This document shows positions 3,143 to 55,300 of a DNA stretch of 64,000 nucleotides, piece by piece. A program made the position numbers and the translations under genes. Numbering within the stretch: the first letter of the stretch is position 1; each line of letters begins with the position of its first letter. The stretch spans positions 46,402 to 110,401 of the forward strand of contig NIVC01002207.1 of assembly GCA_002269645.1 (NCBI GenBank). The letters run 5' to 3'. The DNA comes from Macrostomum lignano (Eukaryota). The notes under the pieces were generated by a model. It worked only from the letters and a program-made list of their open reading frames with translations. It made no database searches and was not told where the DNA came from.

Positions 3143-3180
<38 letters not shown>

Positions 3181-5553: not shown

Positions 5554-6506
5554 GTTGTTTGCGGTGAGCATCTCACAGGGGCCGCCAGTCGACGGCTCCC
5601 AGGAGCTGCGCCACCATATCACCACGTGCAAAGTCGCTCAGATTAGTGACGCCGATGTTGCGTCGAATTGCTTCGAGCTTAGGGCAGGTACAGAGGTGGA
5701 ATTGGTCCGTGACATCCAGGCAAAGTCGGCAGGGGCCGCCTTCGGTGATGCCTGTGCGGTTGCGATAGTAGTTGGAGTCAGGGCAGTGGCCTGCTCTGAC
5801 CTGCGCCACGAGGATTTGTTGGCGGCGTGGTCCCTGATGGAAGGAGATCGGTTTACCGTAGACCTCGGCCATGTGCCCTTGAAGGGTCGGGCGGTACTTG
5901 AGATGATGACGGATGCGCTCTTGAGCGGCTGCAAGGGATATTTCGGACTCGTCCTGAGGCAGGGTGGCCGCGAGCTTGGCCTCTGCGTCGACCAGTTTCC
6001 GGGCACTCCCGAATGTCCCGGAACTCATTGCAGGGTAATCTTCGTGTGCATGGCTGCGGTAGCGAGGAGATCTTTAACTTGCTCAAGCCGCAGGTTGAGG
6101 GTTGGACGGTCAGCTTTGATGGCGGCGATGGCGCTCTGGCTGTCGGTTAGAATGACAGCTTGGCGCGGCTCGGAGCTGATAATGTCTTCCAGGACGAGCT
6201 TGATGGCCATTAATTCAGCTTCATAGGAGTTGCACCAGCGACCCGCTGCTGCGTGCCCGCAGCGACGGATGGTGCTTTTTTGGTCGAGGAGGGTCCATGC
6301 GGCTCCGCCGTTTTCGACCCCTCCGGTTCGAGCCATCCGTGTAGTAGTTGCAGGAACCTGGGCAGCGTTGCTCAATGGCTGCAAAAATTTGTTCGGTCGG
6401 AGTGGCTCCCAGGTCTGGCAGGTTGGTGAAACAGTTGGTCGACAAGAGAGGCCCAGGGTGGCCGTCGGGTAAGGTGGAAGGGTGTTGTTGTTGTTGTTGT
6501 TGTTGT
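5503..6506 (-). mobile_element. 5'-truncated, degenerate non-LTR retrotransposon 3' end (RNase H + C-terminal Cys/His knuckle) with (CAA)n at both ends
   Basis: Motifs YTDGS (~6330-6345), SYEAEL.AI, ILTDSQSAI, Q*VPGHSGVPGN (Trp TGG->TGA at 6025-6027), then ELVDAEAK and CRLC..H..C after frameshifts; (AAC)n tail 5503-5560; second (AAC)n at 6482-6506. Confidence 0.88.
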
Positions 6507-7164
6507 GGCGAATGTCGGCCTGGTGGTCGACATTGCATGGGGCTGAATTTTTTGCCGAGACTCTGACGAACAGGTAACGCGGAGTTTCCGTGATATTATC
6601 AGTTTTTCTGCCTCTGCTGTCTAGTTCTGTCCGCAAGGATCTGCATGTTTGGGCTGCTTTCGTTAGCTGTACAACGTCTAAGACTTGGATACTGACAGAC
6701 TCGCTTGAATAGTTAGTATACGTAGGATCGGCACATGCAGGCTGCATGGTCGTCTGTTGTGCAGCAGGCCGTCGTCGAGATCAGCGACGAGCGAGTTACC
6801 ATGCATGGAATGCGGCACTTTATTCGATTATTCTTTGTCCAACAAGTCACCCTTGGTCCGTCCCCAAGCAACCCGAGACGCTCTGTAAGGTGAATTCCAG
6901 CGGGCATGCGTGTACCACAGTAACGTTGTGATATGAATAAATGTACATGTAAGAACAGGTTTTCTCTTCCATGCAAAGAAACCTAGAAAATCAGGGACAG
7001 AATAGCGCAGTGATAAACGCATCCGACTATCGCTCCACATTATTCACGGCCATTTCGTGTCATTTCCATTTAAATCCCCAGGCTGAGGTGCCTGAAGATT
7101 GGATTCTGTATACAGTACATGTATACATAGGTACACCCTATAATTTGTGATTCAGTATGTGTTA

Positions 7165-24600: not shown

Positions 24601-27475
24601 CACCTAAAAAATCGCCCCCAAATCACCTAGAGAAATTGCCCCCAGATCACCTAAGAAATCGCCCTCAGATCACCTAAAAAATCGCCCCCAAATCACCTAA
24701 AAAATCGCCCCCAAATCACCTAAAAAATCGCCCCCCAAGCCAACCCATCGGTCGCCCTTAAACTACCCTCAAAATCTAGCATCGTAAAACTGCCAGCTTC
24801 CATAAGGAGATAAATCGGCTCAATTGCTTTATCCCCACCACTCCCGAATCTGCAGATCGGAGTTTTACCGAACCTACCGCGATCAAGAGTCCAAGCGCGG
24901 CCTCGACCAGGAAGAGATCATCGAGAAGCCGCAGCGCACCGAGGTGCAGGGCATGCGCCAGGCCATCTACGACAAGCTGGACGATGACGGTCTCATTGCG
25001 CCGGGAGTTCGCGTCTCCGGTGATGACGTGCTCATTGGGAAGACAATCACTCTGCCTGAGAATGAGGACGAGGTGAGCGGACCTCTTGATGACCTGGGCA
25101 GTGGGCAATGGGATGGGAAAAAAGTCCAAGGGTGAGATGGGGAAGAGGCTGAGAATGGATGGAAAAGAGTCTGAGAGTGAGCTGGGGAATAGATGGGGAA
25201 GAGTCTGAGAGAGATGGGGAAGAGTCTGAGACTGAGATGGGTAAGAGTCTGAGAGTGAGATGGGGAAGAGTCTGAGAGTGAGATAGGGAAGAGTCTGAGA
25301 GTGAGATGGGGAAGAGTCTGAGACTGAGATAGGGAAGAGTCTGAGAGAGATGGGGAAGAGTCTGAGACTGAGATGGGGAAGAGTCTGAAAGTGAGATGGG
25401 GAAGAGTCTGGGAGTGAGATGGGGAAGAGTCTGAGAGTGAGATGGGGAAGAATCTGAGAGTGAAATTGGAAAGAGTCTGAGAGTGAAATTGGAAAGTCTG
25501 AGAGTGAGCTGGGGAATAGGTGGGGAAAGGTCGAAGAGTGAGATGGGGAAAGTCTGAGAGTGAGCTGAGGAATAGGTGGGGAAGAGTCGAAGAGTGAGAT
25601 GGGGAAGAGTCTGAGAGTGAGCTAGGGAATAGGTGGGGAAGAGTCGAAGAGTGAGATGGGGAAGAGTCGAAGAGTGAGATGGGGAAGAGTCTGAGAGTGA
25701 GCTGAGGAATAGGTGGGGAAGAGTCGAAGAGTGAGATGAGGAAGAGTCTGAGAGTGAGCTGAGGAATAGGTGGGGAAGAGTCGAAGAGTGAGATGGGGTC
25801 AGGAAGTCTGTGAGCTGAGACAATCCCAGCCAACCCGGTGAATCCCGCAGCTCGAGGGCACGCAGAGCCGCTACACGAAGCGAGACGCCTCGGTGTTCAT
25901 GCGCCGCTCCGAGTACGGCATCGTTGACCAGGTGATGCTGACGGTTAACAACGAGGGCTACAAATTCTGCAAGGTGCGAATTCGCACTACAAAGATACCG
26001 CAGATTGGCGACAAATTCGCTAGCCGTCACGGCCAGAAAGGCACCTGCGGCATTCGACTGCAGCAGCAGGACATGCCGTTCACCTGCGAAGGCATCACCC
26101 CGGATATAATCATTAATCCGCACGCTATCCCGTCGCGTATGACAGTCGGCCATCTGATCGAGTGCCTGCAGGGCAAGGTGTCCGCTAATAAAGGCGAAAT
26201 TGGTGACGCTACGCCGTTCAATGACACGGTGAACGTGCGCCGCATCTCCAAGATGCTGAAAGAGTACGGCTACCAGCAGACTGGCAATGAGATTCTGTAT
26301 AACGGCTTCACCGGTCGGAAGCTCAACGCACAGGTTTTTATCGGGCCAACCTATTATCAGCGATTGAAGCACATGGTTGACGACAAGATTCACTCCCGGG
26401 CTAGAGGCCCCGTGCAGATTCTTAATAGGCAGCCTATGGAGGGCCGGTCCAGGTGAGTTACTCAACTCTGTTGTCAGCTTAAAAATTATCTGACAATACA
26501 CTTGTAGCTTTAAGCCACACTTTGGTCGCTTTGAGTACAAAATGCTTATCACCTGCCCAAAATCACCATTACACCCAAGAATTACCCCATAAGCCCCAAA
26601 TCATCACAAGAATTCAAAACAACATCAAAATCGCCCTTCAAAACAACAAAAAGAATCACCTAAGCCACCCCAAGAATCGCACCGAAAACAGCCCCAAAAT
26701 CGCCCCAAACTAACCAAAGAATCGCCCCAAAAAATCGCACTTAAACTAACCAAAGAATCGCCCCTAAACTAACTAAGAATCGCCCCCAAACTAACCAAAG
26801 AATCGCCCCCAAACTAACCAAAAAATCGCCCCCAAACTAACCAAAGAATCGCCCCCAAACTAACCAAAAAATCGCCCCCAAACTAACCAAAAAATCGCCC
26901 CCAAACTAACCAAAGAATCGCCCCCAAACTAACCAAAGAATCGCCCCCAAACTAACCAAAAAATCGCCCCCAAACTAACCAAAGAATCGCCCCCAAACTA
27001 ACCAAAAAATCGCCCCCCCTAACCACCCCAAAAATCACCCTTCAAAACAACAACAAGAATCGCCCCCAAACCAACTCACGAATTGCATTAAAAGATCGCG
27101 CAGTTTCCGTATGTTTTCTTTTTAGTCCAGCTCCCACTGAGAGCATGGGCAGCATTCAGCAAGTAAATTCCCCCTCCTTCGCGCAGAGACGGCGGCCTCC
27201 GTTTCGGCGAGATGGAGCGCGACTGCCAAATTGCGCACGGTGCGGCGCAGTTCCTGCGCGAGCGCCTGTTCCAGGTGTCCGACCCCTACCGGGTGCACGT
27301 GTGCAACCTGTGCGGCCTAATCTGCATAGCCAATTTGCGCAATAAAACCTACGAATGCCGCGGCTGTCACAACAAGACGCAAATTAGCCAGGTGACAATT
27401 CCGTACGCCTGCAAGCTGCTGTTCCAGGAGCTCATGAGTATGAGCATCGCGCCAAGGCTTATGACCACAACCTGA
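18689..27475 (+). CDS. POLR2B: DNA-directed RNA polymerase II second-largest subunit RPB2. Exons 18689-18933, 19683-20527, 22229-22825, 23347-24087, 24856-25072, 25851-26452, 27187-27475 (plus 7837-7840); 1179 aa
   Basis: Hallmark motifs [59 protein letters not shown] and a C-terminal zinc ribbon; all GT-AG junction phases are consistent; total 3540 nt. Confidence 0.99.
19262..19612. repeat. 16-bp minisatellite (GTGTCGGAGATATGAT), RPB2 intron 2
   Basis: Period 16, ~22 copies. Confidence 0.95.
20605..22160. repeat. 34-38-bp minisatellite (GAATCTTACTGGGTCAGCATCCCCTATGACTCAA), RPB2 intron 3
   Basis: About 40 copies, with higher-order blocks of variant units. Confidence 0.95.
22884..23235. repeat. 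18-bp minisatellite (GAGAGTAGCGGGACTCCT), RPB2 intron 4
   Basis: Period 18, ~19 copies. Confidence 0.95.
24180..24740. repeat. 23-bp minisatellite (AAATCACCTAAAAAATCGCCCCC), RPB2 intron 5
   Basis: ~18 regular copies plus a degenerate 5' flank. Confidence 0.93.
25130..25800. repeat. Purine-rich 23-bp minisatellite (GAGATGGGGAAGAGTCTGAGAGT) with longer variants, RPB2 intron 6
   Basis: Direct reading. Confidence 0.93.
26700..27080. repeat. 23-bp minisatellite (AAACTAACCAAAGAATCGCCCCC), RPB2 intron 7
   Basis: ~14 copies; shares its core with the intron 5 array. Confidence 0.93.
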
Positions 27476-32341: not shown

Positions 32342-33215
32342 CTGGCTGATATCGAATCCGGAGGGCGGGACGCGTTTCTGCTTGCTTCAAAATCAAAGAT
32401 GCCGCGATAGCGAGAGAGAGAGGGGGGAAGGAGGGGGTGGGTGGCCATTTATGCAGCGTCCAACCAGCGCGGGCCACAGTATTTTGCTTTGGTTTCATTT
32501 TTCCATTTTCATGAAAAAAGTTTGTTAAAACCGGTCGCAAAATTTGACTAATTGGTAATATTAAATAATATCATTTGAGACGGGGCGCTTGTGTTAAGGT
32601 TGCCGATAAATCCGTTTGCACCGAGTTAACTTTGGAGTTGGGGGTCAGGCGGTAGCGGCGGTGATGAGCCGGCCTAGGTTCAATTACCTCGTAATTCAGC
32701 CCTAATTATTTGTGGGGGGGGGTTGAGGCGGCTGGGTCGCAGGGTGCAGGCACTTTTGGTTGGACGCACACCCACCCTCTTTCAAGCTGCGCGGCTGGAA
32801 TTGCACTTGAATTGTCGCGTTTTATCATTAACAACAATTAACTGTGGCTGGCGATTATGTATGCTCGCATGTATACACATCTATAATATACTGAATTATT
32901 GTGTAGCATATAACATGAACATTTAGTTACTGTGGTCCGTCCGTAGTCTAAGCGAATGTCAGCGGAAGAATCTTTCTTAGAAAATCTCGGCGAAACACGA
33001 AAGCGTATTTCAATAATCGGAAAAATCACTTCAAAATTGCTTGATTTCCTTTCTCTAAAGAAGAATGGTAAACTAATGATGTACTTCAGTAGCATATAAC
33101 TTTAGTTTATATAAACTCGATTCCCACAATGATGCTCTGCATCATTCCACAAACATCGGTGTACTACATGTGCATGTATAACACCCTTAAAATATATGTC
33201 CCGAAGATGTTGTCC

Positions 33216-33290
33216 CGCACATCTATCTGATGTCTATCTATCTATCTATCTATCTGATGTCTATCTATCTATCGATCTATCGATCTATCG

Positions 33291-33330
<40 letters not shown>

Positions 33331-33455
33331 GATGTCTATCTATCTATCGATCTATCGATCTATCGATCTATCTATCTATCTATCTATCTGATGTCTATCT
33401 ATCTATCGATCTATCGATCTATCGATCTATCTATCTATCTACCTATCTATCTGTG

Positions 33456-33499
<44 letters not shown>

Positions 33500-33519
33500 G
33501 ATCTATCTATCTGTCTATC

Positions 33520-33584
<65 letters not shown>

Positions 33585-33650
33585 GATGTCTATCTATCTA
33601 TCGATCTATCGATCTATCGATCTATCTATCTATCTACCTATCTATCTGTG

Positions 33651-33698
<48 letters not shown>

Positions 33699-33728
33699 GA
33701 TCTATCTATCTGTCTATCTATCTGTCTG

Positions 33729-33766
<38 letters not shown>

Positions 33767-33803
33767 CATCTATCTGTCTATCTATCTATCTATCTATCTG
33801 ATG

Positions 33804-33885
<82 letters not shown>

Positions 33886-33907
33886 CATCTATCGATCTAT
33901 ATATCTA

Positions 33908-33990
<83 letters not shown>

Positions 33991-33993
33991 GTG

Positions 33994-34030
<37 letters not shown>

Positions 34031-34080
34031 GGTTATCTATCTGTCATCTGTCTATCTATCATCTATCCATCTACATCTAC
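33216..34080. repeat. (TATC)n microsatellite, ~860 bp
   Basis: Direct reading; source of the LSIY ORFs. Confidence 0.98.
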
Positions 34081-34644
34081 ATGGCTCAATCACAGAAAAT
34101 GTCGGTGGCTATTGACTAGATTAAAAAGTTCTGTGCGCTACTAAAAGCCAATGTGTAAATGTCTCAGCTTCTTGAGAAGTGCTTCAAATGCGCAAACTAA
34201 TACAGATTCTACAGAATAGTTTGAAAGCTTTTTTCCGCTTTTTTCTCTCGTTCTCAAACTCTATTGAGCAGTCAATTGTTCTGCTATTCTCCTCTACTCA
34301 CTGGCGCTGCTCTAACTGGCCTGGGACGGCTTAAAGCAGAGATGCATGCGTCATCACGCAGTCTAATTTAGCAGATGCATGGCGACAGCAGGAGTGAAGT
34401 TCACAGAGGCAGAGGTAAAATAGAGATAGGGCTAATCTAGGTTGGTTGGTAACTTAAATGCATTTATAGGTGACTTGCTGTGTCAATGGAGCAAAGTACA
34501 TGTAAGTATAAAATGCAAAGATGCAACCCATGCAAAATGTCGGCAGCCCACTGAGTAATGTACGAGTATGTGCGAACATATTCACAATATTTACAAATGA
34601 AGTTCCTTAATAACTACGGAATCAATGGTTGAAGGCGTAATAAT

Positions 34645-35145: not shown

Positions 35146-37169
35146 AATAACTACGGAATTACACAGAAAAACAGAATCAAATTACAGTAAAATTTGGCAA
35201 AATAAAGAGCAGGCTAACACAACCTTGCATAGCCTCGGTTCGGCTTGCATCACGTGCTTTTAGTTCACAATGACGCGCGCACAACTAAATTAAAAAGGTT
35301 AAATTTTCATGGGGTCGCACTGTGGCCAGCACTGAGCAAACTTACTTTTGCTCTGGATAATTACTCGCTACTAAAGACATATTCTGACGATTATTCGATA
35401 AGAATGGGGAAGGGGTGGGGGTGTGTGCGGCATAAAGTGCCAGGGCCAGAAGCCAGTTTTCCAGACCCCCCCACGCCTCCCCCGCCAGAGCAGCCACCCC
35501 ACTGCACTTCAACTATCCGCTGCGAGCACAGCGAAAGATAAGAAGCGAATTTAAAGAACATGCCTGTACTTGCTAAAAAAACTTGTTAAAAAAGTGCAGA
35601 TCAGAACTCTAAATTCTGGCACAAAAAACTCGTGACTAAATCGATATCAGGCCATAAAGATATGAAGGGAGCGGCGTTGCAGACAGAGATAGAGAGATGT
35701 TTATAAGTGCATGACCGAATAAAAGTTCAAATTGACACAAAACAATAAGTATTGTTCTTTATTGATTAAACAGTAAATTTATAAGCATAAAATGCTTGAT
35801 TGAGGTGTAGCAATCTATAAATATATTTATTTAGCTACCCAAAGAAGCTGTTAACAAAATAAAAACTATGAAGGCAATATTAACCTAAGTAAGTTTTGTT
35901 ATTCGTTAGAAACTAAATGTAAACATCCGACAAGGAAAGCAGATGATCGGAATATACATAGACGAGAGACGTCTATAAAGATATGAGTTTTATATCGTAA
36001 TGGCTATCAAATTTATTGCTAAACAAAAAACATTAAAACATGGCATCAGCATTCAGAGCCGAAAATAAGATCCATTTTAGGCTTGTTTAACTACCTGAGA
36101 ACGCACAGGTGATTTGGCTCAGTAGTCAAGTAAAGGCATTGTAGTCTATGGAGATTGTTCACGAGCAAGACGAATGGCATAGCCAATTGAGGAGACTGCA
36201 AGTTGTACCATAGACAGGAGCATCATTGAATGCTGACTGTTTTGGCCCTTAGCCTCTCACGAACCCTAGCTCTCTCTCTCTCTTTTGTTGTCTATGGCCA
36301 GTTCCTCTCCTACCACTTTTCTCATGCGCAGGCCCTCGTTGCTTCACTGGTCTGACTAGCGAAATAAATCGATAAGCTTATTACCGCTTTATCGATAAAG
36401 ACAATTATCGATAATCGATAATTTTCAAACGTCAAGCTATATTATGAGCATCAATGATCCAAACCGTAGAAGAGCTCTTCAACCTGATTCCACTGCTGGT
36501 AGACGTTAAATCTGCAGAGTCTATAGCGGAGTTGCAACCTCATTATTGGATACTAGTTGGTGCCTTAGTGGATTATCCTACTTAAACAGAGCATTTTCTA
36601 AGCTAAATTCGATCCTAGAAGCAATTTAATCCTTCGTGAGAATCCAAAAAGGGGTCTGTAGAGCAACCAATTTGACAAGTTGCTATAGTTTAAACGCAAT
36701 TCCCTTCCTATCCCAACTGCTAACATTTTCCACAGCCCGAACTACTAACAGTAGCGTAAAAGCATTTCTGCTTTAACAACCTAATTAAACAACAAACAAA
36801 AGACAATGTGGTATTATTGCAGGCTTATTGATTGCAGTCAATGCTAAAGACGTCATTAACTTCACTCAATTTTGGCTATACCATTTGGCACTGGGCCTAA
36901 TTTGGGACACAAGGTTCGAGGCTCTTTACCATTAGACTACCTGTAAAATTAGTCAAAGATAAAAGCAATCGTAGGTTATAAAAATATGAGTACAAAACGA
37001 GACTGCCACCCGTTTTCTCTCATAAAGACGTTTTACACGATCAAACTGAACCCGGTGCAGAAGCTAATAAACGCAAACATTAACAAAAACGAAATGCAAT
37101 CAAATAAATGTACGAAGTCGATTCAGTCTCCTAGTGAGAGTGGACTAGCAATCCATTCCCCTATATCTC

Positions 37170-38210
37170 AAGAGTCGTTCTCCCTCATATTCCAATCTCC
37201 CATACCTTATATCTCATTTTCCTATATCTCACATCTCACATATCATTCTCCTATATCTCATATCTCACTCTCCTATATCTCATATCTCACTCTCGTAGAT
37301 CTCATATCCCACTCTCCTGTATCTCACATCTCACTCTCCTATATCTCACATCTCACTCTCTTATGTCTCACTCTCACTCTCCTATATCTCATTTCATTCT
37401 CTTATATCTCATATCTCACTCTCCTATATCTCATCTCTCACTCTCGTAGATCTCATATCCCACTCTCCTGTATCTCACATCTCACTCTCCTATATCTCAC
37501 ATCTCACGCTCCTATATCTCACATCTCACACTCCTATATCTCACATCTCACGCTCCTATATCTCACATCTCACACTCCTATATCTCATATCGCATATCTC
37601 AATCTCCTATATCTCGCATCTCAGTCCTATATCTCACATCTCACTCTCCTATATCTTACATCTCACTCTCCTATATCTCACATCTCACTCTCTTATGTCT
37701 CACACCCACTCTCCTATATCTCACTCACCTATATCTCATTTCATTCTCCTATATCTCATATCTCACGCTCCTATATCTCATATCTCACGCTCCTATATCT
37801 CATATCTCACGCTCCTATATCTCATATCTCACGCTCCTATATCTCATATCGCATATCTCACTCTCCTTTATCTCACATTTCACATCTCACTCTCATATAT
37901 CACATCTCAATCTCTTATATCTCACATCTCACTCTCCTATTTCTCATCTCGCTCTCCTACATCCCATTACTCTCCTATATCTCATATCGCACATCTCGCT
38001 CTCATATAACTCATCTCACTCTCCTACATATCAGATCTCACTCACGTATATCTTATATCTCAACCTCCTATATCTTATATTTGCTGTATCTCATCTCACT
38101 CTTCTATGCCTCATATCTCATATTTCATATTTCATATCCCATGTCTAATTTCTTACACTTCTATATTTCGCATTCATATCTCTCAAAAACTCATATTCCA
38201 TACCTCATTT
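37170..38210. repeat. Degenerate ~22-bp CT/AT-rich minisatellite (TCTCACATCTCACTCTCCTATA)
   Basis: Direct reading; explains the SHIS/LLYL ORFs. Confidence 0.9.
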
Positions 38211-38306
38211 TCTAGTCTCCCACATCAGAGAGAGAATTTCGCGCACTACTCTTAACAAAGCAACACCAACGCCCAATTTTTGACGCAATCGGAGACAGTT
38301 GCCGCC

Positions 38307-41300
38307 TCAGCGATTGGCCGCCGTCGTGGTCGCCGTCTTCGACACCGTTGACGATGTAGAGGAGGTCGCATTCTGCCTCGGCGATCGGCGAAGGCCTTTG
38401 CCGCCGGGCCGGTAGCTACTGGACTGCGAGTCCCCAGTTGATGGGGTCAGCCGCTCCAGCTGAAACAGACCGCCACTGCCGCCGCCGCCGCCGCCGCTCT
38501 CAAAGCCGTCCAGGGTCTTACGCAGCAGCTGCGCATGCTCCAAACGCATTCTGGGTCCGTCGGGCGAATTGGCCACCAACTCGGCGGTGGTCATTCTGGC
38601 CAACTGCTCGGTCCGGTTGATGCCAATGCGGGCAAACCTGTTGGCGTACTGGTTGAGGCCGATAAAGTGCAGCAAGTCGCTGGCATTGGTCGGATACAGC
38701 GACAGCTGCTGAGACTGCTGCTGCTTCTGGGGGGCATCGACACCCACTGCCTCCGTGGCCAGAGTGACCAGGCGGGGCTTGGCAGCTGAAGGCTGATGCG
38801 GCAGGCTGGCTGAGGCATCCGGCGCTGCGGAGACTTCGGTGGGCTGCAATGGTTCGGAGCGAATGACAGCGACATCAGTACCAATGGGAATGGGTGGGGT
38901 AGATGGTAGGGTGGATAGGGGTAGATGGTGGGGAGGATAGGGGTAGATGGTAGGGTGGATAGGGGTAGATGGTAGGGTGGATAGGGGTAGATGGTGGGGA
39001 GGATAGGGGTAGATGGTGGGAAGGATAAGGGGTAGATGGTAGGGAGGATAGGGGTAGATGTTGGGGAGGATAGGGGTAGATGGTGGGGAGGATAGGGGTA
39101 GATGGTGGGGAGGATAGGGGTAGATGGTGGGGAGGATAGGGGTAGATGGTGGGGAGGATAGGAGTAGATGTTGGGGAGGATAGGGGTAGATGGTGGGGAG
39201 GATAGGGGTAGATGGTGGGGAGGATAGGGGTAGATGGTGGGGAGGATAGGGGTAGATGGTGGGGAGGATAGGGGTAGATGGTGGGGAGGATAGGAGTAGA
39301 TGGTGGGGAGGATAGGGGTAGATGGTGGGGAGGATAGGGGTAGATGGTGGGGAGGATAGGGGTAGATGGTGGGGAGGATAGGGGTAGATGGTGGGGAGGA
39401 TAGGGGTAGATAGTAGGGTGGATAGGGGTAGATGGTAGGGTGGATAGGGGTAGATGGTGGGGAGGATAGGGGTAGATGGTAGGGCGGATAGGGGTAGATG
39501 GTAGGGAGGATAGGGGTAGATGGTAGGGCGGATAGGGGTAGATGGTAGGGCGGATAGGGGTAGATGGTAGGGCGGATAGGGGTAGATTCCGATGAAAACG
39601 GTGCCTAGGTCAAGATACATTCCACGCAGAGTCACTTGCGTCGCCCCAGAGTCATTTCAGAGTCGTTGCAGGCAACACAGGTAAAATACGAAAGGCGTCC
39701 GGAAAGTAGTGTTACTATATGATTTTTCGTTTGATTTCATAAAATTGTCATTTGATTTCGTCCATAGAAGTTGGCAGCGCGGCCATAGAGTCTATGGCAA
39801 TAAAGTGCGCTGTTTTCCAATTGAATTCATAACTTTGCCACTTCATTTCGACATACCCAGTAGAAAGGCAACAGAAAAGTCGGTGCGCTTGTCCAGTACA
39901 GAAAGAACTGTTAAAAACAGAAAGCTGTGTATTTAAGTCACATGAGGAAGTAGGCAGTTGCAACAGTGAAATCAGTTATGTCCGCCAAAGTTAATGCTCG
40001 TTCGCTGCAACAAGCTACAAATTTCACATTATCTGCTGCTCATTGATGCACAGGGGCAGAAACCGCATCACATGTCGTTCCCAGGCAAGGCAATTCGCGG
40101 CGGAAATTTCCTCTAGTGCAACGTAGCCGCAGCGGAAAAGCACCATGAGTCTCCACTGCGTTAGGTTGATGCCATCAGGCGGATTGCCAAGTTCCTGTTG
40201 AAGCTCAGGTGTTGCTAGCTGGCGTTTAAGCGAAGCCTTGAGACAACTGTGTGCCTGCTCCGCGGCGTTAAGAAATGGAGAATACGGTGGCAGAGTTCGC
40301 AGTTGAATACGATTGGCCGCGTTTATACGTTTCCAATGGACGCGTATGCAGCCATTTTTAGGCACACAAGGAAGGTGACTGTTGCCCAAGAAGAGGACAC
40401 GTTCATATAGGCTTTTCATTTCTATGAGAGGTTTGGCCATAGATATTCACCCACTGATATCCCAGCCCCCTCTGGCAGTGTTTGAGTCACTCCGCGCGTC
40501 AAGTCGAAATGAAGTGGCAAAGTTATGAATTCAATCGGAAAACAGCGCAGACTCTATGGCCGCGCTGCCAACTTCTATGGACGAAATTAAATGACAATTT
40601 TATCAAACGAAAAATCCTATATTACTTGGTGTGGACGTATGGAAAGTTGCACTTGCATGAGTTTGGTGTCATTTGAAAGCGGCAAGTCTCTTCTTTAAAA
40701 TGACGATTTTTCTCGCATGCATAAACTGTCTATGGCCAAATTCGATGCAGTAAATGAGAGGGGGCTGCCTCAGAAAACTAAGACTGCAGTTGCTGTGCTG
40801 AGTCAATAACAGTCTCGATCAATTGGAGAGCGAGGTTAGGAGGGTCCTGCTGAACCAGATTCCGAGAACTCTATACGCAGACGCCATCGACAAGATGCGA
40901 GACCGATGGGAGAAGTGCGTCATGTCTGGTGGTGACTACGTTTAGAAGACAACTCTGCCAACCGATGAGTGATTTTAACGTTGTTCGCTTGTATAACAAT
41001 TTTACTTGTTATCACCTGTTTCTTACTGTGCTTTTGTTGTGTTGTTTTGATTTTCTTGGAGTGATTAATAAAAGTTTTCTGCAGACACAGCTTGTGTAAG
41101 TCTATGACCGACCTTTCTCAACTTAATTATTCATATCTATTGAAGCACATATTCAAATCTCTTGCAATTGGTGTCATTTTAAAGAAGAGACTTGCCGCTT
41201 TCAAATGACACCAAACTCATGCAAGTGCAACTTCCCATACGTCCACACCGAGTAATAGTAACACTACCTTCCGGACGCTCCTCGTACAAAAGCAGTGACT

Positions 41301-44300
41301 CTAAACCGCTCTAAAATGACGAGATGTCGCGGTACAAGTCGCCAAGAAGTCGTCAAAGAGTCGCCTAAGGGTCAATTTTAAGGTTTTTATGTGTCTGCGA
41401 CTCAGGGGCCGTAGGGTCGTATCTGGGACGTGTCAGAGTCGCTGTAGAGTCACTGCGTTGCATTTAAAGTGCATCTGCGTCAATTAAATGAATGAGAATT
41501 GTACTTCCCATTTATATAACAACTCTATTAAGTTCACTTGAGTCAGTAGGAAGTTAAGCGCTAACATAACCATTTTCGGACAACTTTTTCGTAACTCTTT
41601 TACGATTCTGCCACTCACGCGATGCGCTTGTGATTCAACAGTCGCCCCTCGGTCGCATTTTAAGTCGAAAGAGTCGTTAAAAAAGTCACAAGAGTCGCCC
41701 CAGAGTCGCAGGTGGGTTCTTTGCAATGACCCTTCAGCGATTCTTGTCCCGTTTTCAACGTTTTCAACGGGGATGGTAGAACGGATAGAGGTAGATAGAG
41801 AGGGAATAGAAATAATTAGGCCAATTACAGGATTATAGCTCAAATAAGCTGTTTACAAAAAACAGCAATAAAATCTGCCTCGCACTGCATCGAGCAAAAG
41901 TACAATGAATTAGAGAACGCAGGGCTGTAAAAAATGAAACGAAGTCTGAGTATGTTTACAGCTGCTGTTAGTTCAAAGAACCCTTCCCTCAGCATAGAAA
42001 TTTAAATGTCCTAGCGTACTCAAAAACGTAGCACGTTTCACACTGCAAAATAACAAAATCCACCCCCGCTCCTAGACAGTCTACTATGAGTAGAAATGCA
42101 GGCTCAGCTCACCTCGTGTCTCACTATAATGGTTGGCTGGCTGGACAAAAGCGGAGGCGTGGGATGGGCAGCGGAACTGGCAGCCACAGCCGGCGCCGGC
42201 GCAGCCTGATGCTCTGGCTGCTGCTGCTGGAGGGACTGGCTAAGATTAAAACTCCAGCTGTTATTGGCTGTCCCAGTGCTGGGATTGGTAGAATTTGACA
42301 GCAGTCGCAGGAGCATGCCAAGCGTGTCAGTTCGATTAAGCGACTGCTGCTGCTGCTGCTGCTGCGACTGTTGCGACTGCTGCGACTGCTGCTGCTGTGA
42401 AGAAGTCGCTAACGGTACCGAAAGCATGGGATTGCCCAGCATGGGATTGCCGCTGCTGTCCGAGGACGAGCCCTGGCTGCTGCCAACAGGCGGGGTGGTC
42501 AGCCCCGAGGCGCCGAATAGCAGCTGCTGAGCCTGCCGATGGCCCTCTAGCAAACCTTGAAGCAGCAGGGCCCCGTACTTGGCGTGGAAGGCTGATTGGA
42601 AGTGAAGGCCGATAAAATTCGAATTCTCTTCGTAGGAGAGAATGACTGTCTCGCAGCCAAAGAGCAGCTGCTGCTGCTGTGGAGGAGGCGGTGGAGGCGG
42701 CGCTGGCTGCGGCGCTGGCTGCGGCGGCGGAGTCGGGGGCACCGAGTCGTCCTCAGGCGGCAGGGGGCGCTTCGTTCCTGCCAGCTTGCTGCTCTGATGC
42801 TGCGTTTTCTTCATGTGCGAACAGCCGGCTGGGCAGCCGATCTGCTCTTGGCTGAGCAGCTCGCACACCTCGGCAATGAGATCGCGGTACGGCGAGGCCA
42901 CGGCGCGGACGCGGAAGGCGAATCGGCCGGCGAATTGCCAGTCGCCTCGGCCAGCCGGAGCGGCCTCCAGGCAGACGGTGACGCAGATGCCCTTCTTGCT
43001 GCCGCGGTCGACGTGCGAGCTGGGGCAGGTGATGGTCATCGGCACAGACACGTCAGCCTGGCTGCTGTCGGGGTGCACCGGCGGGCTGACGGTCAGCAGG
43101 CCCAGCACGCTGCTGTCTCCCAGGCAGACGTACTGGGCCGCTGATGTCAACAGCAGAAGAGCGGAATTGTAGTGCGCGGACAGCGACTCGGGGCCGCGCT
43201 GTGCGTACACGGACCCGATTTTAGTCGGCAGCCGCCGGTTGCCGCTCTTCGAATTGGTGCCGTCATAGATGCCGCGCGCGTGGGCCTCGGCGCACTGGGC
43301 GCACTCGCGCAGGCTGGCCGACTTGTCGAAGATGAACACATTGAACACCATCCGGTATTGAAAGCGCCGATCGTAGCGGAAACTGCGGAATGAACATTGC
43401 TGCTCACACTGTCACCTCACTCCCTGTACCCCTGCTCTCACTGCCACCTCACTCCCTGTACCCCTGCTCTCACTGTCACCTCACTCCCTGTACCCCTGCT
43501 CTCACTGTCACCTCACTTCCTGTACCCCTGCTCACACTGTCACCTCACTTCCTGTACCCCTGCTCTCACTGTCACCTCACTCCCTGTACCCCTGCTCACA
43601 CTGTCACCTCACTTCCTGTACCCCTGCTCACACTGTCACCTCACTCCCTGTATCCCTGCTCACACTGTCACCTCACTCCCTGTATCCCTGCTCACACTGC
43701 CACCTCACTCCCTGTATCCCTGCTCACACTGCCACCTCACTCCCTGTATCCCTGCTCACACTGCCACCTCACTCCCTGTACCCCTGCTCACACTGCCACC
43801 TCACTCCCTGTACCCCTGCTCACACTGCCACCTCACTCCCTGTATCCCTGCTCTCACTGTTACCTCACTCCCTGTATCCCTGCTCACACTTTCACCTCAC
43901 TCCCTGTATCCCTGCTCACACTGCCACCTCACTCCCTGTATCCCTGCTCTCACTGTCACCTCACTCCCTGTATCCCTGCTCACACTTTCACCTCACTCCC
44001 TGTATCCCTGCTCACATTGCCACCTCACTCCCTGTATCCCTGCTCACACTGCCACCTCACTCCCTGTATCCCTGCTCACACTGCCACCTCACTTCCTGTA
44101 CCCCTGCTCACACTGCCACCTCACTCCCTGTATCCCTGCTCACACTGCCACCTCACTCCCTGTATCCCTGCTCACACTGCCACCTCACTCCCTGTATCCC
44201 TGCTCTCACTGTTACCTCACTCCCTGTATCCCTGCTCACACTTTCACCTCACTCCCTGTACCCCTGCTCACACTGCCACCTCACTCCCTGTATCCCTGCT

Positions 44301-45394
44301 CACACTTTCACCTCACTCCCTGTATCCCTGCTCTCACTGTCACCTCACTCCCTGTATCCCTGCTCACACTTTCACCTCACTCCCTGTACCCCTGCTCACA
44401 TTGCCACCTCACTCCCTGTATCCCTGCTCACACTGCCACCTCACTCCCTGTATCCCTGCTCACACTGCCACCTCACTTCCTGTACCCCTGCTCACACTGC
44501 CACCTCACTCCCTGTATCCCTGCTCACACTGCCACCTCACTCCCTGTATCCCTGCTCACACTGCCACCTCACTCCCTGTATCCCTGCTCACACTTTCACC
44601 TCACTCCCTGTATCCCTGCTCACACTTTCACCTCACTCTCTGTACCCCTGCTCACACTGCCACCTCACTCCCTGTATCCCTGCTCACACTTTCACCTCAC
44701 TCCCTGTATCCCTGCTCACACTGCCACCTCACTCCCTGTATCCCTGCTCTCACTGTTACCTCACTCCCTGTATCCCTGCTCACACTTTCACCTCACTCCC
44801 TGTACCCCTGCTCACACTGCCACCTCACTCCCTGTATCCCTGCTCACACTTTCACCTCACTCCCTGTATCCCTGCTCACACTTTCACCTCACTCCCTGTA
44901 CCCCTGCTCACACTGCCACCTCACTCCCTGTATCCCTGCTCACACTTTCACCTCACTCCCTGTATCCCTGCTCACACTGCCACCTCACTCCCTGTATCCC
45001 TGCTTACACTGCCACCTCACTCCCTGTATCCCTGCTCACACTGCCACCTCACTCCCTGTATCCAAGCTCAAAGGGTTACAAAAACTCTTTATATACAAGA
45101 ATACCTGGCCACCAGAGACACCTCGTCCATTGGTTTTAGCCAAAGTGTGGGTATCACATCCGGGTGCTTGAGTATCTGGCAGTGAGCGGAGGCCGTGGCG
45201 CTGACAAGAGCCTCCTGGATCAGGGCCTGGTCCTGCGCTGACCAGCCCACAAAACAGTGCGGCACGCTGCTGCTCTTATTAAACCGATCGTGCAGCGTGG
45301 CACCCAGACTGGCCCGATTCTTAATGTCCACCCGGAACTCGTAGCTGCCGGGGTCGTCCGCTGTTTTGAAATATTCCTCACAGTTGGCATGCAT
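38307..45394 (-). CDS. Divergent p53/p63/p73-family transcription factor with C-terminal SAM domain. Exons 45394(acceptor 45417)-45105, 43382-42113, 38843-38307; ~698 aa; 5' end uncertain
   Basis: Colinear matches to the p53 DBD: PGSYEFRVDI (QGSYGFRLGF), LRECAQC (VRRCPHH), ITCPSSHVDRGSKKGICVTVCLE ([22 protein letters not shown]), GRFAFRVRAVASPYRD (GRNSFEVRVCACPGRD), AGTKRPLP (GSTKRALP NLS); SAM-like LLHFIGLNQYANRFARIGINRTEQL. Splice phases are consistent (2, then 0). Confidence 0.85.
38895..39587. repeat. G-rich 22-bp minisatellite (GGGGAGGATAGGGGTAGATGGT), ~31 copies, in the last intron of the p53-like gene
   Basis: Direct reading; the degenerate unit resumes after 41772. Confidence 0.95.
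39687..41286 (+). mobile_element. Internally deleted mariner element with ~115-bp TIRs, nested in the CACTA-like element
   Basis: TACGA..GCGTCCGGAA.GTAGTGTTACTAT ends with TA; transposase C-terminal remnant LYADAIDKMRDRWEKCVMSGGDYV at ~40880-40945. Confidence 0.88.
39718..40619 (-). mobile_element. IS630/Tc1-family element (~135-bp TIRs, TA TSD) inserted in the left TIR of the mariner; DDE transposase C-terminal fragment at 40024-40440
   Basis: LPPYSPFLNAAEQAHSCLK motif; TIRs TA(T/G)GATTTTTCGTTTGAT...; TA duplication at 39716-17 and 40620-21. Confidence 0.9.
43400..45060. repeat. 32-bp minisatellite (CCTCACTCCCTGTATCCCTGCTCACACTGCCA), ~52 copies, filling an intron of the p53-like gene
   Basis: Direct reading; source of the 580-593-aa spurious ORFs. 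Confidence 0.97.
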
Positions 45395-45544
45395 GCTGAC
45401 GTGCTCTCTTTGCCCTTCTAGTTAATAGCAAGACAGAGATTAGGCTGGACAGAGATTAGGCTGTTTTGAAGGTCATTAAGAAAGCCAAAATTTGCTCTAC
45501 ACGATGCTCTACGCGATGAACGCGTTAATAAATACGGTATTATG

Positions 45545-45830
45545 GCTGTTGCTATGCGAACATTTGATGTTGCTAGGCTAAAATGGCTGTTTCTATGCGA
45601 ACATTTGATGTTGCTAGGCTCAAACGGCTATTGCTATGCGAAAATTTGATGTTGCTAGGCTCAAACGGCTATTGCTATGCGAACATTTGATGTTGCTAGG
45701 CTCAAACGGCTATTGCTATGCGAACATTTGATGTTGCTAGGCTCAAACGGCTATTGCTATGCGAACATTTGATGTTGCTAGGCTAAAACGGCTGTTGCTA
45801 TGCGAACATTGATGTTGCTAAGCTAATATT
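45545..45830. repeat. 41-bp minisatellite, ~7 copies
   Basis: GCTATGCGAACATTTGATGTTGCTAGGCTCAAACGGCTATT, period 41. Confidence 0.93.
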
Positions 45831-46314: not shown

Positions 46315-46557
46315 GTTGCTAAGCTACCATCCCAGTTGCTAAGCTACCAACCCAGCTGCTAAGCTACCAACCCTGTTGCTAAGCTACCAACCCAGTTGCT
46401 AACCCGCCAACGCAGTTGCTAAGCTACCATCCCAGTTGCTAAGCTACCATCCCAGTTGCTAAGCTACCATCCCAGTTGCTAAGCTACCAACACAGTTGCT
46501 AAGCTACCAACACAGTTGCTAACCCGCCAACGCAGTTGCTAAGCTACCATCCCAGTT
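46315..46557. repeat. 20-bp minisatellite (GTTGCTAAGCTACCATCCCA), ~12 copies
   Basis: Direct reading. Confidence 0.93.
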
Positions 46558-49045: not shown

Positions 49046-49924
49046 TTTACTTCCATGGGAACTATACATACTCATACACAGCTTTTAACACTACAAATTA
49101 AAAGAATGGAAGTCAGCAGTTAATGCTAGGTTTGAAAATGTCAGACATTTCTTCTTGTACAAAGCGCGCCTGACACTTGCATTTTATTGACTGAAAAAAT
49201 CTAACAACACGGCGAGTTAAATAAAACGAACGCTGTCACAAGAACACAAATAGGTGAAAAGAAACAATTTCTGTAAAAATGGGAAAAAAGAAACAAGCAT
49301 AAACAATAAGAAATGAGCATTTTCATAAGCACAGTAGGACTATTAATACCAAAAACTCCGTTCGCATGCTATGAAACATGGAATTTCTAATGAAATAAAC
49401 GGAGAGCTATAAGTAGTATATGACGATTACAAAATAGCCAACTAAACTCTATCGAGAGATTGTTTAAACATAATAACTACATTATTTAGATAATCTACCA
49501 GGTGAAAAAGATGATAAAATAAAAATGCTTCAACGCAGCGCTTTAAAACATAAATTATGTGCGATACGTGTTTTGTTCAGCAATCTTTTTTTATTATTAC
49601 AAAGTACGGCAAGACATCAATCGGCAACGACACTTGCGAATGCGCAAATAATATTGACAATGCAAAATGCAAAATCTGTGTTTTGGCTCAAGCAGCTGAC
49701 GAGTGAAATTAGCACCTTTTCAAGACTAATATTGCTTGCAGTCTTGTAAAAAGTCATAAAATATTTAATGATATGAAATGACATCACATATTTAATAATT
49801 AATAAAGGAGCAAAGGCAGAGTTTCCCAGCACTTTTTTACAGTGGTGAGCATTCTTGTAGGGCTTGGGAAGTAAATTGGATTGAAACGTAAGTAAAAAAG
49901 TAAAAGCAATTAAGGGGCTGTCAG

Positions 49925-50222
49925 GGGGTGTGTACATTGAAGTGGTGGGCTGCCAAGGGCGTGTGTACATTGGGGTGGTGGGCTGCCAAGGGCGTGTGTA
50001 CATTGGGGTGGTGGGCTGCCAAGGGCGTGTGTACATTGGGGTGGTGGGCTGCCATGGGTGTGTACATTGGAGTTGTGGGCTGCCAAGGGTGTGTACATTG
50101 GGGTGGTGGGCTGCCAAGGGTGTGTACATTGGGGTGGTGGGTTGCCAAGGGCGTGTACATTGGGGTGGTGGGCTGCCAAGGGTGTGTGTACATTGGGGTG
50201 GTGGGCTGTCAAGGGCATGTGT
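49925..50222. repeat. 31-33-bp G-rich minisatellite (GTGTACATTGGGGTGGTGGGCTGCCAAGGGC), ~9 copies
   Basis: Direct reading. Confidence 0.94.
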
Positions 50223-52310: not shown

Positions 52311-55300
52311 TCAGTGCGACCGGAGGCGGCCGCTGACAGTCGAGACGAAGGCTGCCGACATTGGAGAGCCGCCGCTGGCGCCAACGCTGACACTGAGGTT
52401 GCGACTGGCGCCGTCGCCGCGCCGAGTCACGGAGACGCGCAGCGCCCTACGACTGGCTGCTGGCTGCTGCCGAAGTTGCTGCTGCTGCTGTTTCAATTGC
52501 TTGAGATTCTGCTTCCGCTGTTGCTGGTGCCTGGTCAGTTGAGGAACACTAGCCCTGCTGGGAACCATGGCAACGGCTGAGGAGTCGCCGCGACAATTAT
52601 CAAACAGTTGCAGCGGCGGTGGCGGCGGCGGCGACGAGGAAGAAGACGACGACGGCGCGTGCGGCTGGTGCAGCGGCGGCGGGGATGAGGAGGAGTCCAG
52701 CGGGCCGAGCAGCGAGGCGATGTCAGCCAGGTCGGCAGCGCAGTCAACACTGTCGGAAGCCGGGGGCAGCTGGAACAGGTCGGCTGGCAGCAGCGACATG
52801 AGGTCGGAGGAGAGCTCACCGGACAGCTGGTCGGCGCCATCGACGGTTAGCTGGCTAAGCGACGATTCTGTAGCTGCTGGGGGCGTCGGCGTCGGCGGCG
52901 GCGGCAGGGACGCCGATTCGCTAACTGGCGGCGTCGGGGCTGTATTGAATGGAAAATCAAATATCAGATAGTTTAATCATAACACAGATCGCCTACTGAA
53001 AAGTAGCGAGAAAAGAATTTTAAGCAACTGTTTTATAGTCTGTACAAAAAGTATATCTACATCATTGGCCGCGACTGTGCAAACAAAATTAGAACAAACC
53101 CGGGGAGCTTGTCCGGCATTTCCAAGAGCCTCTGCTGGTTAGTAGTCAGATTGAAAATGACCAGCTATTTTTAAGTTACGAAATCATTTTTTCTACTTTT
53201 AGGTTTCACAGTCCACAGACCGAAATTTCGCAAACGCCTAAAAAGACGTCCCGGTGTTTTCGTGATGTACCACTAGTAAGTGAAATTCAACAGATGCTCA
53301 GCTCTTAAACGGCTCATATTTGTCTTACTAAACATACGTATGTAAAAACGCAGGTAGGTAAGATTCGTGAGAACTTCATATTATACAATTGTCTACTGAT
53401 GTCTCTATCGGTCATGTTGGGCCTACGGCAATTGACTGCTACAGATTGAACTGCCACCCTAACCCTAAACTAACCTAAAGCTCCTGGTCAAGTTTGTGTG
53501 GCACTTTGGTGTAGGCATTAAATAACATGAAATAAAACATGATTAATAGTTTCCATAGCAGCGATACAAATGAAGGCGAAACCAGTAAGCACGAGGGAGT
53601 AAAAATTATATTTTATAAAATGACTAAAACTAAGTTACTAGGAATTCTGGGTACAGTGGGGACAATATTCAGACAATGGATCAAATTTAAAGGCTTACAT
53701 GTAGATCATTAGTATGCTTATAGTGCAAAGATTGCATCACAACCTGTGCATCTACCTGCGGCGCCTTAGACATGACATTAAACAATCAATAACTGCATGC
53801 ACACTTGAAATATCATTAAAACACTCGTTCCATTTTCGCACCTGTATAATAATTTAAGCAGAATCAAACTAGGAAAATTAAGCTACAATAAATAAAACAA
53901 AGTAAATAAATGGAGAGCTGCGAACTTGGAATATACCAAAAGAAAATAAAAATTTCCCTCTATACAATACAAATATCTTAGGATCGGCGACCAAATAGTA
54001 GAAATTGTCTCAGTCTTTTCTAGGCAGATTTTTGAGTCTATATAATATGGCCTGTATAGGATAACCACTGTCTCTTATTATGGAATATATATTGCTACTA
54101 AAAATGACTGTGATAAATACAATAATAGCATGATTTTGCTCAGCCGGCATCGCAGTCGGCAATCAGGCCAGCCAAATAGCTCGAGTCCGGCTGGAACTGA
54201 GAACAGGCAGCCACCGACAGATAATTGGCGCTGCGATACTTTTGGTACACGAATCGGTGCTGATGATGATCCTGATGGGGATGCTGGTGCGCGACTCGCG
54301 CCACCAGCCGCGGCTCTGAGCACGGCGCGAGCCAGGCTGGCGCAGACTGAGCGCAGTGACTCAGCTGAGTAGCCAGAGTAGAAAGCCAGCTGTTTGGACC
54401 AATCTCGCAATTCTGAGCCAAGCGAAACTCTTAGAGCGCCGGCGGCCAGCCGACTGGCCGGCAGGCAGGACAGCTCGGTGCTGAGCGTGGCCAGCTCCAG
54501 CAGGTATTTGGCAATAAAGTGCAGCCGATTATCGACGCCGGCTACTTTGGACAGTCGGCGCAGAAAGGTAATTGGCAGCGGAGGAAGCAGGTGAAAATCA
54601 AGCGCGCCAACCAGGCGAGTCTCAATAGTCAGCAGATCGCGCCGGCCACAGGCGCCGGCGCAGACGTGCAGGAGGTCGCCAAGGCTGATGCAGTAGACCT
54701 CTTCGAGCTTGGAGGCCAGCCAGAGCGCAGCAGCGCCCAGCGACTGCAACTGGTGCTTGGCTAAACACGAATCAACAGCCAGGTAGTGGTCTAGCAGGCG
54801 TACGGACAGGTGGAAAGTGTCCGATTGAAGCTCAAATCTGCCGCTCAATTGAAGCAGCCAATCGACTAGACAGCGCGAGATCGTTCAGTAATCTCGGCGT
54901 GTCCAGACAGTAGATTATTCGGCAAGGTGTAAGCTAATTCCCGTTCAGCCAGGTACACAAAGATGTCCTTAGCGTAGGCAGTTACCATGGTGCAGTGGCC
55001 TCGTTGATCAGCGTCTGGCACGTCAGCTGGCAGAGTCGCTGATCGATCCAAGCAGGGCAGCCTGCTTGGCTCAGCTGGTGCAACCTCCACCGTAGATGTG
55101 GAGTCGGCCTCAGCGACTTTAACATCGGACTTGCATGTATTGTCATTCTTATTACCTGTAGCTTTCTGACAAACAGAGCGGCGCAGCGACTGTTGCTGGC
55201 TATTGTTGGAGCACTGCCTTAGCGGCTCTCTAACAGGCTGCTGTCGACGTTTCCCGTTGATTTGCTGCTGAGAATCTTTTTGATTGACCGGCTGACTAAT

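What the first reader, a model, noticed from the sequence alone, without database searches (positions are those of the whole stretch)
43013..43303. Reciprocal swap of the zinc ligands in the p53-like DBD (CxxH/CxxxC becomes CxxC/CxxxH)
Canonical p53 binds Zn through C176, H179, C238 and C242. By my alignment this protein has C-A-Q-C (43303-43292) and C-P-S-S-H (43027-43013), so His and Cys have exchanged between loops L2 and L3 while keeping a Cys3His site. A double compensatory change argues for selection on a functional fold. I do not know of this arrangement being described.
Basis: partly seen in the sequence, partly recalled or inferred. Interest (0 to 1): 0.7.

Follow-up and report, generated by a model that had tools for sequence, protein, structure and literature searches.

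The report
Flatworm p53-like domain, altered zinc site
The gene is a very divergent p53-family transcription factor of the flatworm Macrostomum lignano in which one of the four classical zinc-binding residues (Cys242) is replaced by histidine, but the proposed "reciprocal swap" with the other loop is not supported, because the classical histidine is still in its usual place.

Summary
The window is Macrostomum lignano DNA. The two motifs are real and in frame, in exon 2 of an annotated three-exon gene on the minus strand (PAA59970.1, 698 aa): CAQC is aa 124-127 and CPSSH is aa 216-220.

The protein is too divergent for Pfam's P53 model. A vertebrate p53/p63 profile still finds it (11.7 bits; 0 of 3000 shuffles reach that), hhalign gives E 3.5e-4, and 14 hallmark p53 residues are kept. 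These include R273, R280, D281, E258 and C238.

In loop L3 the alignment is firm: C216 = C238 and H220 = C242. The only detectable relative, a 26%-identical paralog, also has Cys-x3-His there. So the Cys242-to-His change is real and conserved.

MAFFT, global hhalign and an offset scan (shuffle p about 0.01) all place H131, the His of AEAH, on H179. C127 lies one residue before the C176 column.

The most likely site is therefore Cys127/His131/Cys216/His220, with one ligand changed and no compensatory swap. No usable structure model could be made, so ligand identity remains an inference.

Verdict: a new variant of a known kind, of moderate interest.

The parts
45105..45394 (-). Coding exon 1 (aa 1-96 plus two bases of codon 97). 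ATG at 45394, donor GCCAG|GTATTC after 45105. Carries the N-terminal part of the DBD: GSYEFRV = p53 strand S1, and CQILK...LW = S2'/S3 with K76 = K139.
   Evidence: alignment
43383..45104 (-). Intron 1, phase 2. Almost entirely a 32-bp tandem repeat array (43400-45070, 52 copies, 94% matches).
42113..43382 (-). Coding exon 2 (aa 97-520). Holds the rest of the DBD (to about aa 272), the conserved Cys/His cluster, a Pro/Gln-rich linker and a possible oligomerisation stretch. Donor GAG|GTGAGC after 42113.
43292..43303 (-). C124-A-Q-C127. C127 is invariant in the paralog and lies one residue before the C176 column. C124 is four residues before it, and its equivalent in the paralog cannot be judged.
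43280..43282 (-). H131 (the His of AEAH). Aligned to p53 H179 by MAFFT, global hhalign and the offset scan. Followed by R133 = R181.
43013..43027 (-). C216-P-S-S-H220 on the p53 L3 signature C238-N-S-S-C242. This is the Cys242-to-His substitution. The paralog has C-M-T-T-H.
42884..42997 (-). DNA-contact equivalents: K226 (= R248, 42997-42995), R256 (= R273, 42907-42905), R263-D264 (= R280-D281, 42886-42881), within FRVRAVASPYRD = FEVRVCACPGRD.
42815..42838 (-). G-C280-P-A-G-C284-S-H286, directly after helix H2. C280, C284 and H286 are invariant in the paralog (GCRMGCGH) and absent from vertebrate p53/p63. Candidate extra metal-binding element.
38307..38852 (-). Coding exon 3 (aa 521-698, stop included) with a weak SAM-domain match at aa 575-611 (about 38690-38580).

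Best explanation
The gene encodes a highly divergent p53/p63-type transcription factor of Macrostomum lignano. It has a DNA-binding domain, a low-complexity linker and a C-terminal SAM-like domain.

The DBD keeps the p53 core and the main DNA contacts: R256 = R273, R263 = R280 and K226 = R248. The L2/L3 zinc site is retained but re-made. C238 is kept (C216). H179 is kept (H131). C242 is replaced by His (H220). The L2 cysteine sits one residue earlier than C176 (C127, giving Cys-x3-His instead of Cys-x2-His). The predicted site is therefore Cys2His2 (C127, H131, C216, H220), with C124 as a spare or alternative thiol.

Shown: gene structure, motif positions, the L3 alignment, and conservation of C127/C216/H220 in a 26%-identical paralog.

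Inferred: the L2 register (moderate statistical support), that the site binds zinc, and that the protein binds p53-type response elements.
For: Family:
- A vertebrate p53/p63 HMM scores P0001 at 11.7 bits, E 7.6e-6 for the single comparison. None of 3000 shuffles reaches that; their maximum is 9.7.
- hhalign local gives E 3.5e-4 over aa 177-272.
- The paralog P0002 hits Pfam P53 at E 0.0016-0.005.
- A 30-sequence MAFFT alignment shows invariant K139, H193, Y205, C238, S240, L257, E258, G266, R267, F270, R273, P278, R280 and D281 equivalents.
- There is a weak SAM match at the C-terminus.

L3:
- C216 = C238 and H220 = C242 in BLASTP, hhalign, hmmsearch (posterior >=0.95) and MAFFT.
- The offset control gives p about 0.001.
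- The paralog has CMTTH.

L2:
- Offset +48 (H131 = H179, also V157, I162, S166, E171, R181) scores +11.0. Shuffle p is about 0.006-0.01 for segments that include the strand.
- MAFFT and global hhalign agree.
- C127 is invariant between the paralogs.
Against: - Pfam P53 does not detect the window protein at all. The paralog stays below the gathering score, at 17-19 bits against 27.
- No PDB sequence hit to p53.
- hhalign probability is only 37%.
- L2 alone gives no local HMM match. The offset signal disappears for the shortest segment, aa 120-136.
- In the paralog the L2 His is one residue later (Cys-x4-His), so the register is not rigid.
- The paralog's gene model lacks the 27 residues before its Cys, so it cannot say whether a Cys equivalent to C124 is conserved.
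- AF2 without p53 sequences in the alignment failed (pLDDT 30). The second model (pLDDT 48) was driven by vertebrate p53 rows, and no coordinates were available to inspect the site.
- No orthologs from other species could be retrieved.
Confidence: 0.55

Rival explanations
1. One reading: a reciprocal ligand swap. C124 and C127 (CxxC knuckle) replace C176/H179 and C216/H220 replace C238/C242. The site stays Cys3His, and H131 is a bystander.
For: - CxxC is a classical zinc knuckle (general knowledge).
- Both cysteines lie within a few residues of the C176 column.
- C127 is conserved in the paralog.
- The L2 region cannot be aligned by local similarity alone, so a four-residue register change cannot be excluded.
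- The low-confidence AF2 model places C124, C127 and H131 in one helix (121-132), where by helix geometry (my inference) they would share a face, so any two could reach a metal.
Against: - Offset +52 scores -17.2, indistinguishable from shuffles, while +48 scores +11.
- MAFFT and hhalign place H131, not C127, on H179.
- As modelled, the paralog has Gly at the position of C124 and a His near H131.
Confidence: 0.2
2. The canonical L2/L3 zinc site is lost or moved. The conserved C280-x3-C284-x-H286 cluster after helix H2, perhaps with H35 or an L2/L3 residue, holds the structural metal. C216/H220 are relics.
For: - C280, C284, H286 and H35 are invariant between paralogs that share only 26% identity.
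- They have no counterpart in vertebrate p53/p63.
- The C176 column itself is Ala.
Against: - C216 and H220 are also invariant between the paralogs.
- C216, S218, E236 and the flanking L3/S9 residues follow the p53 pattern closely, which suggests L3 is still held as in p53.
- There is no structural evidence for the second site.
Confidence: 0.12
3. The resemblance to p53 is spurious or the gene is decaying, so the Cys/His pattern has no functional meaning.
For: - No Pfam or PDB sequence hit for the window protein.
- Only one detectable relative among 1.8 billion representatives.
Against: - Shuffle tests reject chance for the L3-S10-H2 block.
- 14 hallmark residues are invariant.
- The reading frame is intact over three exons. 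A second contig (NIVC01002708.1) carries a copy whose DBD-coding sequence (exon 1 and exon 2 up to base 937, in the poly-Gln linker) is identical.
- The two paralogs retain the DBD core at 26% identity.
Confidence: 0.08

Closest known systems
Vertebrate p53/p63/p73 DNA-binding domain (Pfam PF00870; e.g. PDB 1TSR/2OCJ)
   Same: - Collinear S1, S2'-S3, S4-L2, L3, S9, S10 and H2 blocks.
- Equivalents of K139, H179, H193, Y205, C238, S240, E258, R267, R273, P278, R280 and D281 are kept.
- A C-terminal SAM-like domain, as in p63/p73.
   Different: - C242 is His and the C176 column is Ala, with Cys one residue earlier.
- R248/R249 are Lys-Lys. C275/C277 are Val/Ser.
- There are insertions of about 13 aa before and about 22 aa after the L2 His.
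- An extra conserved CxxxCxH cluster follows H2.
- No recognisable transactivation or tetramerisation domain.
- Below Pfam's threshold.
Flatworm p53 homologs Smed-p53 and Schistosoma mansoni p53-1/p53-2 (PMC9478680)
   Same: Same phylum and a divergent p53 family. A role in the stem-cell/epidermal lineage would be the default functional expectation. A p53 motif marks the epidermal lineage in flatworm chromatin data (PMC11398382).
   Different: Those proteins are reported to carry a Pfam-detectable PF00870 domain and no SAM domain (PMC9478680).
C. elegans CEP-1 and Drosophila p53 (own knowledge, not tested here)
   Same: Precedents for p53 DBDs that are nearly undetectable by sequence yet keep the fold. 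CEP-1 also carries a C-terminal SAM domain.
   Different: From memory, both keep the canonical Cys-His-Cys-Cys ligands. The Alvinella study calls the zinc-binding residues strictly conserved in its sample (PMC8901663).

Membership tests
p53 family DNA-binding domain (PF00870) | Match to the curated Pfam P53 model at or above its gathering score (27 bits) | tested here: not met
   No hit for the window protein. The paralog P0002 scores 17.1-18.8 bits, E 0.0016-0.005.
p53 family DNA-binding domain (PF00870) | Significant profile similarity over the L3-S9-S10-H2 block, including the MCNSSC and R-x-C-A-C-P-G-R-D signatures | tested here: met
   hmmsearch with a vertebrate p53/p63 HMM gives 11.7 bits, E 7.6e-6 (Z=1), and 0/3000 shuffles reach it. 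hhalign gives E 3.5e-4, prob 37%. Offset controls give p 0.001 and 0.0002.
p53 family DNA-binding domain (PF00870) | Four zinc ligands C176, H179, C238, C242 | tested here: inconclusive
   C238 is kept (C216). H179 is kept by the best alignment (H131, p about 0.01). C242 is His (H220). The C176 column is Ala with Cys at -1 and -4. A four-ligand Cys/His set is still available, but its composition differs.
p53 family DNA-binding domain (PF00870) | DNA-contact residues R248, R273, R280 (and K120) | tested here: met
   K226 (conservative), R256 and R263. The L1/K120 equivalent could not be aligned.
p53 family DNA-binding domain (PF00870) | Immunoglobulin-like beta-sandwich fold with a loop-sheet-helix motif | tested here: inconclusive
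   AF2 with only the two flatworm sequences gave pLDDT 30. With vertebrate p53 rows added it gave pLDDT 48, and Foldseek top hits were p53/p63/p73 with TM 0.4-0.5. That result is circular.
p63/p73-type architecture | Tetramerisation domain and C-terminal SAM domain | tested here: inconclusive
   SAM_2 E 0.014, below threshold. SHIP2/EphA2 SAM E 0.056. UniRef names the protein 'SAM domain-containing'. No P53_tetramer hit.
Zinc-binding p53 domain (functional) | One structural Zn per domain, required for DNA binding | not testable with these tools
   Needs metal analysis of recombinant protein.

The most novel reading that the evidence does not exclude
Macrostomid flatworms carry a p53-family DNA-binding domain whose structural metal chemistry has been rebuilt. 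It has a Cys2His2 (rather than Cys3His) L2/L3 site, plus a second lineage-specific Cys-x3-Cys-x-His site that clamps the end of helix H2. That would make it a two-metal, less thiol-dependent p53 domain.
Probability: 0.12. Interest if true: 0.6.

Novelty: new variant of a known kind. Interest (0 to 1): 0.35.

Why it matters
The Cys3His zinc site is treated as a strictly conserved feature of the p53 family (PMC8901663). From general knowledge, it is also central to p53 instability, redox sensitivity and zinc-metallochaperone therapy ideas.

A natural family member that has kept the site but exchanged Cys242 for His would be a ready-made test. It would show how much of p53's folding and DNA binding depends on the exact ligand set.

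The result also identifies a p53-type gene, and a paralog, in a regeneration model organism where the databases call it only 'SAM domain-containing protein'.

The specific claim of a compensatory double swap, which made the finding look remarkable, does not hold up.

Tried and rejected
- I first took the window for insect DNA (poly-Q, GC pattern). Exact look-up showed Macrostomum lignano instead.
- Pfam and PDB sequence searches with the exon, the spliced DBD, the two-sequence profile and the paralog gave no p53 hit, except the weak Pfam hit of the paralog.
- The word-indexed homolog search with the DBD found nothing. With the two-sequence profile it found only the paralog.
- The exhaustive representative search found only the gene's own protein and one paralog.
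- A metagenome scan found nothing.
- The third homolog search, with human p53 + p63, listed only vertebrates, so no flatworm or other invertebrate bridge sequences were obtained.
- The paralog's DNA is not on record.
- The second genomic copy, L002, has an identical exon 1 and its only exon-2 difference lies in the poly-Gln linker downstream of the DBD, so it gives no information on divergence.
- hmmalign and sub-HMMs of L2 gave no alignment of L2.
- AF2 on two sequences was useless.
- My first hand alignment of S2-S3 (PHCFVGW as S3) was replaced by the profile alignment, CQILK...TLWL = CQLAK...QLWV.
- The supplementary ortholog tables of PMC9478680 are not held.

Full report
**What is at the coordinates**

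The minus strand of 43303..43292 encodes C-A-Q-C and 43027..43013 encodes C-P-S-S-H. A-E-A-H follows CAQC directly, at 43291..43280. All three lie in one long open frame entered through a splice acceptor at 43384-43383. An upstream exon (45394..45105, donor GCCAG|GTATTC) joins it in phase.

The spliced product is 100% identical over 304 residues to a database protein, P0001. P0001 is PAA59970.1 / UniRef A0A267EEJ4, 'hypothetical protein BOX15_Mlig030740g1 / SAM domain-containing protein' of the flatworm Macrostomum lignano, 698 aa. A third exon lies at 38852..38307. The window is therefore flatworm nuclear DNA, not insect as I first guessed.

Neighbouring genes are:
- a 2-hydroxyacid dehydrogenase just upstream;
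- an Rpb2-type RNA polymerase subunit;
- a cyclin;
- a Cys-loop receptor exon.

A second contig of the same assembly carries another copy of the gene. Its exon 1 is identical, and its only exon-2 difference lies in the poly-Gln linker downstream of the DBD.

**Is it a p53-like DNA-binding domain?**

Standard detection fails:
- Pfam P53 does not report the window protein.
- PDB sequence searches find no p53.
- BLASTP against the human core domain is not significant, although its weak pieces are collinear.
- Among 1.84 billion representative proteins, only the gene's own protein and one other M. lignano protein match. The other is P0002 = A0A1I8GLG0, 26% identical, E 7.5e-10.

Targeted tests are positive:
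- P0002 hits Pfam P53 weakly, E 0.0016-0.005 and 17-19 bits against a gathering score of 27.
- An HMM built from 20 vertebrate p53/p63 DBDs (retrieved, aligned) scores the window protein at 11.7 bits, E 7.6e-6 for that single comparison. None of 3000 shuffles of the sequence reaches this; their maximum is 9.7.
- hhalign of the two-flatworm profile against the vertebrate profile gives E 3.5e-4 and probability 37% over aa 177-272.
- In a 30-sequence MAFFT alignment, the columns identical in all sequences are the equivalents of K139, H193, Y205, C238, S240, L257, E258, G266, R267, F270, R273, P278, R280 and D281.
- The C-terminus has a weak SAM match.

I conclude with fairly high confidence that this is a real but extremely divergent p53/p63-type protein. 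It formally fails the Pfam threshold.

The fold could not be confirmed independently. AF2 on the two flatworm sequences gave pLDDT 30. AF2 with vertebrate p53 rows added gave pLDDT 48, and Foldseek hits to p53/p63/p73 had TM 0.4-0.5. That second result is circular.

**Loop L3**

Every method gives the same alignment: TITC-PSS-H-VDRGSKKGICVTVCLE on [23 protein letters not shown]. This holds for BLASTP, hhalign, hmmsearch with posterior >=0.95 and MAFFT. An ungapped offset scan of aa 209-236 picks offset +22 with shuffle p about 0.001.

So C216 = C238 and H220 = C242. The paralog has C-M-T-T-H at the same place. The Cys242-to-His replacement is real and is shared by two genes that have otherwise diverged to 26% identity.

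**Loop L2**

Three analyses disagree:
- MAFFT with 28 vertebrate sequences puts H131 in the H179 column, A128 in the C176 column and R133 on R181.
- Global hhalign puts C127 on C176, with a one-residue gap, and H131 on H179.
- An ungapped scan of aa 108-136 against a p53/p63 position matrix gives +11.0 at offset +48. Identities there are V157, I162, S166, E171, H179 and R181. The null mean is -27 with sd 9.6. The best-offset score is reached by about 1% of shuffles.

Offset +48 stays the best offset for six different segment boundaries. The p-value ranges from 0.006 to 0.1 for segments that include the strand, and there is no significance for the shortest segment, aa 120-136.

L2 has no stand-alone local similarity, so this support is moderate, not conclusive.

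The paralog reads A-L-C-S-D-Q-K-H-R-G. Its Cys aligns with C127, and it has a His five residues later, next to the conserved R-G. Its model lacks exactly the 27 residues that follow the exon 1/2 junction of the window gene. This looks like a mis-called acceptor, so it cannot tell whether a C124 equivalent exists. Its DNA is not on record.

**Most likely mechanism**

The domain keeps a four-ligand Cys/His site bridging L2 and L3, but its composition is probably Cys2His2: C127, H131, C216 and H220. One ligand is substituted (C242H), and the L2 cysteine is displaced by one residue, giving Cys-x3-His instead of Cys-x2-His. C124 is a spare or alternative thiol.

The low-confidence AF2 model puts C124, C127 and H131 in one helix (121-132), so they could share one face.

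DNA contacts R273 and R280 are kept, and R248 is Lys, so binding to p53-type half-sites is expected. This is an inference. A p53 motif is reported as an epidermal-lineage marker in flatworm chromatin data that include this species (PMC11398382). Flatworm p53-1/Smed-p53 act in stem-cell and epidermal differentiation (PMC9478680).

**Comparison with what is known**

The zinc ligands are described as strictly conserved in the sampled p53 family (PMC8901663). I found no paper describing a His at position 242 or any p53 analysis of M. lignano. The library is limited to open-access text, and the flatworm ortholog tables of PMC9478680 were not available.

The protein is best described as a new variant of a known kind. 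Its interest rests on the C242H change and on an additional conserved C-x3-C-x-H cluster after helix H2, not on a compensatory swap.

**Limits**

- There are only two family members and no orthologs from other species.
- There is no usable structure and no coordinates.
- The L2 register rests on p of about 0.01.
- Zinc binding itself is untested.

Noticed in passing
window 42815-42838 (-), aa 279-286: G-C-P-A-G-C-S-H directly after helix H2 of the DBD. C280, C284 and H286 are invariant in the 26%-identical paralog (GCRMGCGH) and absent from vertebrate p53/p63. H35 (45292-45290) is also invariant. This is a possible second metal site.
   Followed up: partly
window 43400-45070: Intron 1 of the p53-like gene is almost wholly a 32-bp minisatellite (52 copies, 94% matches). 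It creates long spurious ORFs on the + strand (593 and 580 aa).
   Followed up: partly
window 45544-45824 and 46315-46557: Two further tandem arrays (41 bp x 6.9 copies, 20 bp x 12.1 copies) lie in the 1.25-kb spacer between the p53-like gene and the upstream 2-hydroxyacid dehydrogenase gene. UniRef A0A1I8HBP9 (945 aa) is a read-through fusion model of the two genes.
   Followed up: partly
window 40027-40440 (-), inside intron 2 (38853-42112): ORF with a weak DDE_3 transposase match (E 3e-4, below threshold). It is probably a transposon remnant in the intron.
   Followed up: no
P0002 (A0A1I8GLG0), aa ~208-216: The paralog's gene model lacks exactly the 27 residues that follow the exon 1/2 junction of the window gene (an in-frame skip), which is probably a mis-called splice acceptor. 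UniRef also names it 'START domain-containing', which nothing here supports.
   Followed up: partly
window 19593-26456 (+): Exons of an Rpb2-type RNA polymerase second-largest subunit (Pfam RNA_pol_Rpb2_1, 2, 4, 5, 6), interrupted by repeat-rich introns.
   Followed up: partly
window 54081-54848 (-), 2812-3408 (+), 6028-6747 (-): A cyclin (Cyclin_N + Cyclin_C), a Cys-loop receptor transmembrane exon, and an RVT_3/RNase H-like retroelement fragment.
   Followed up: no
window 1496-2027, 19227-19721, 24967-25833, 33196-34115, 36986-39635, 49617-50129, 59705-60361: Many long ORFs are artefacts of short tandem repeats, with periodic peptide patterns on both strands. Composition swings between 29% and 61% GC across the window.
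   Followed up: no
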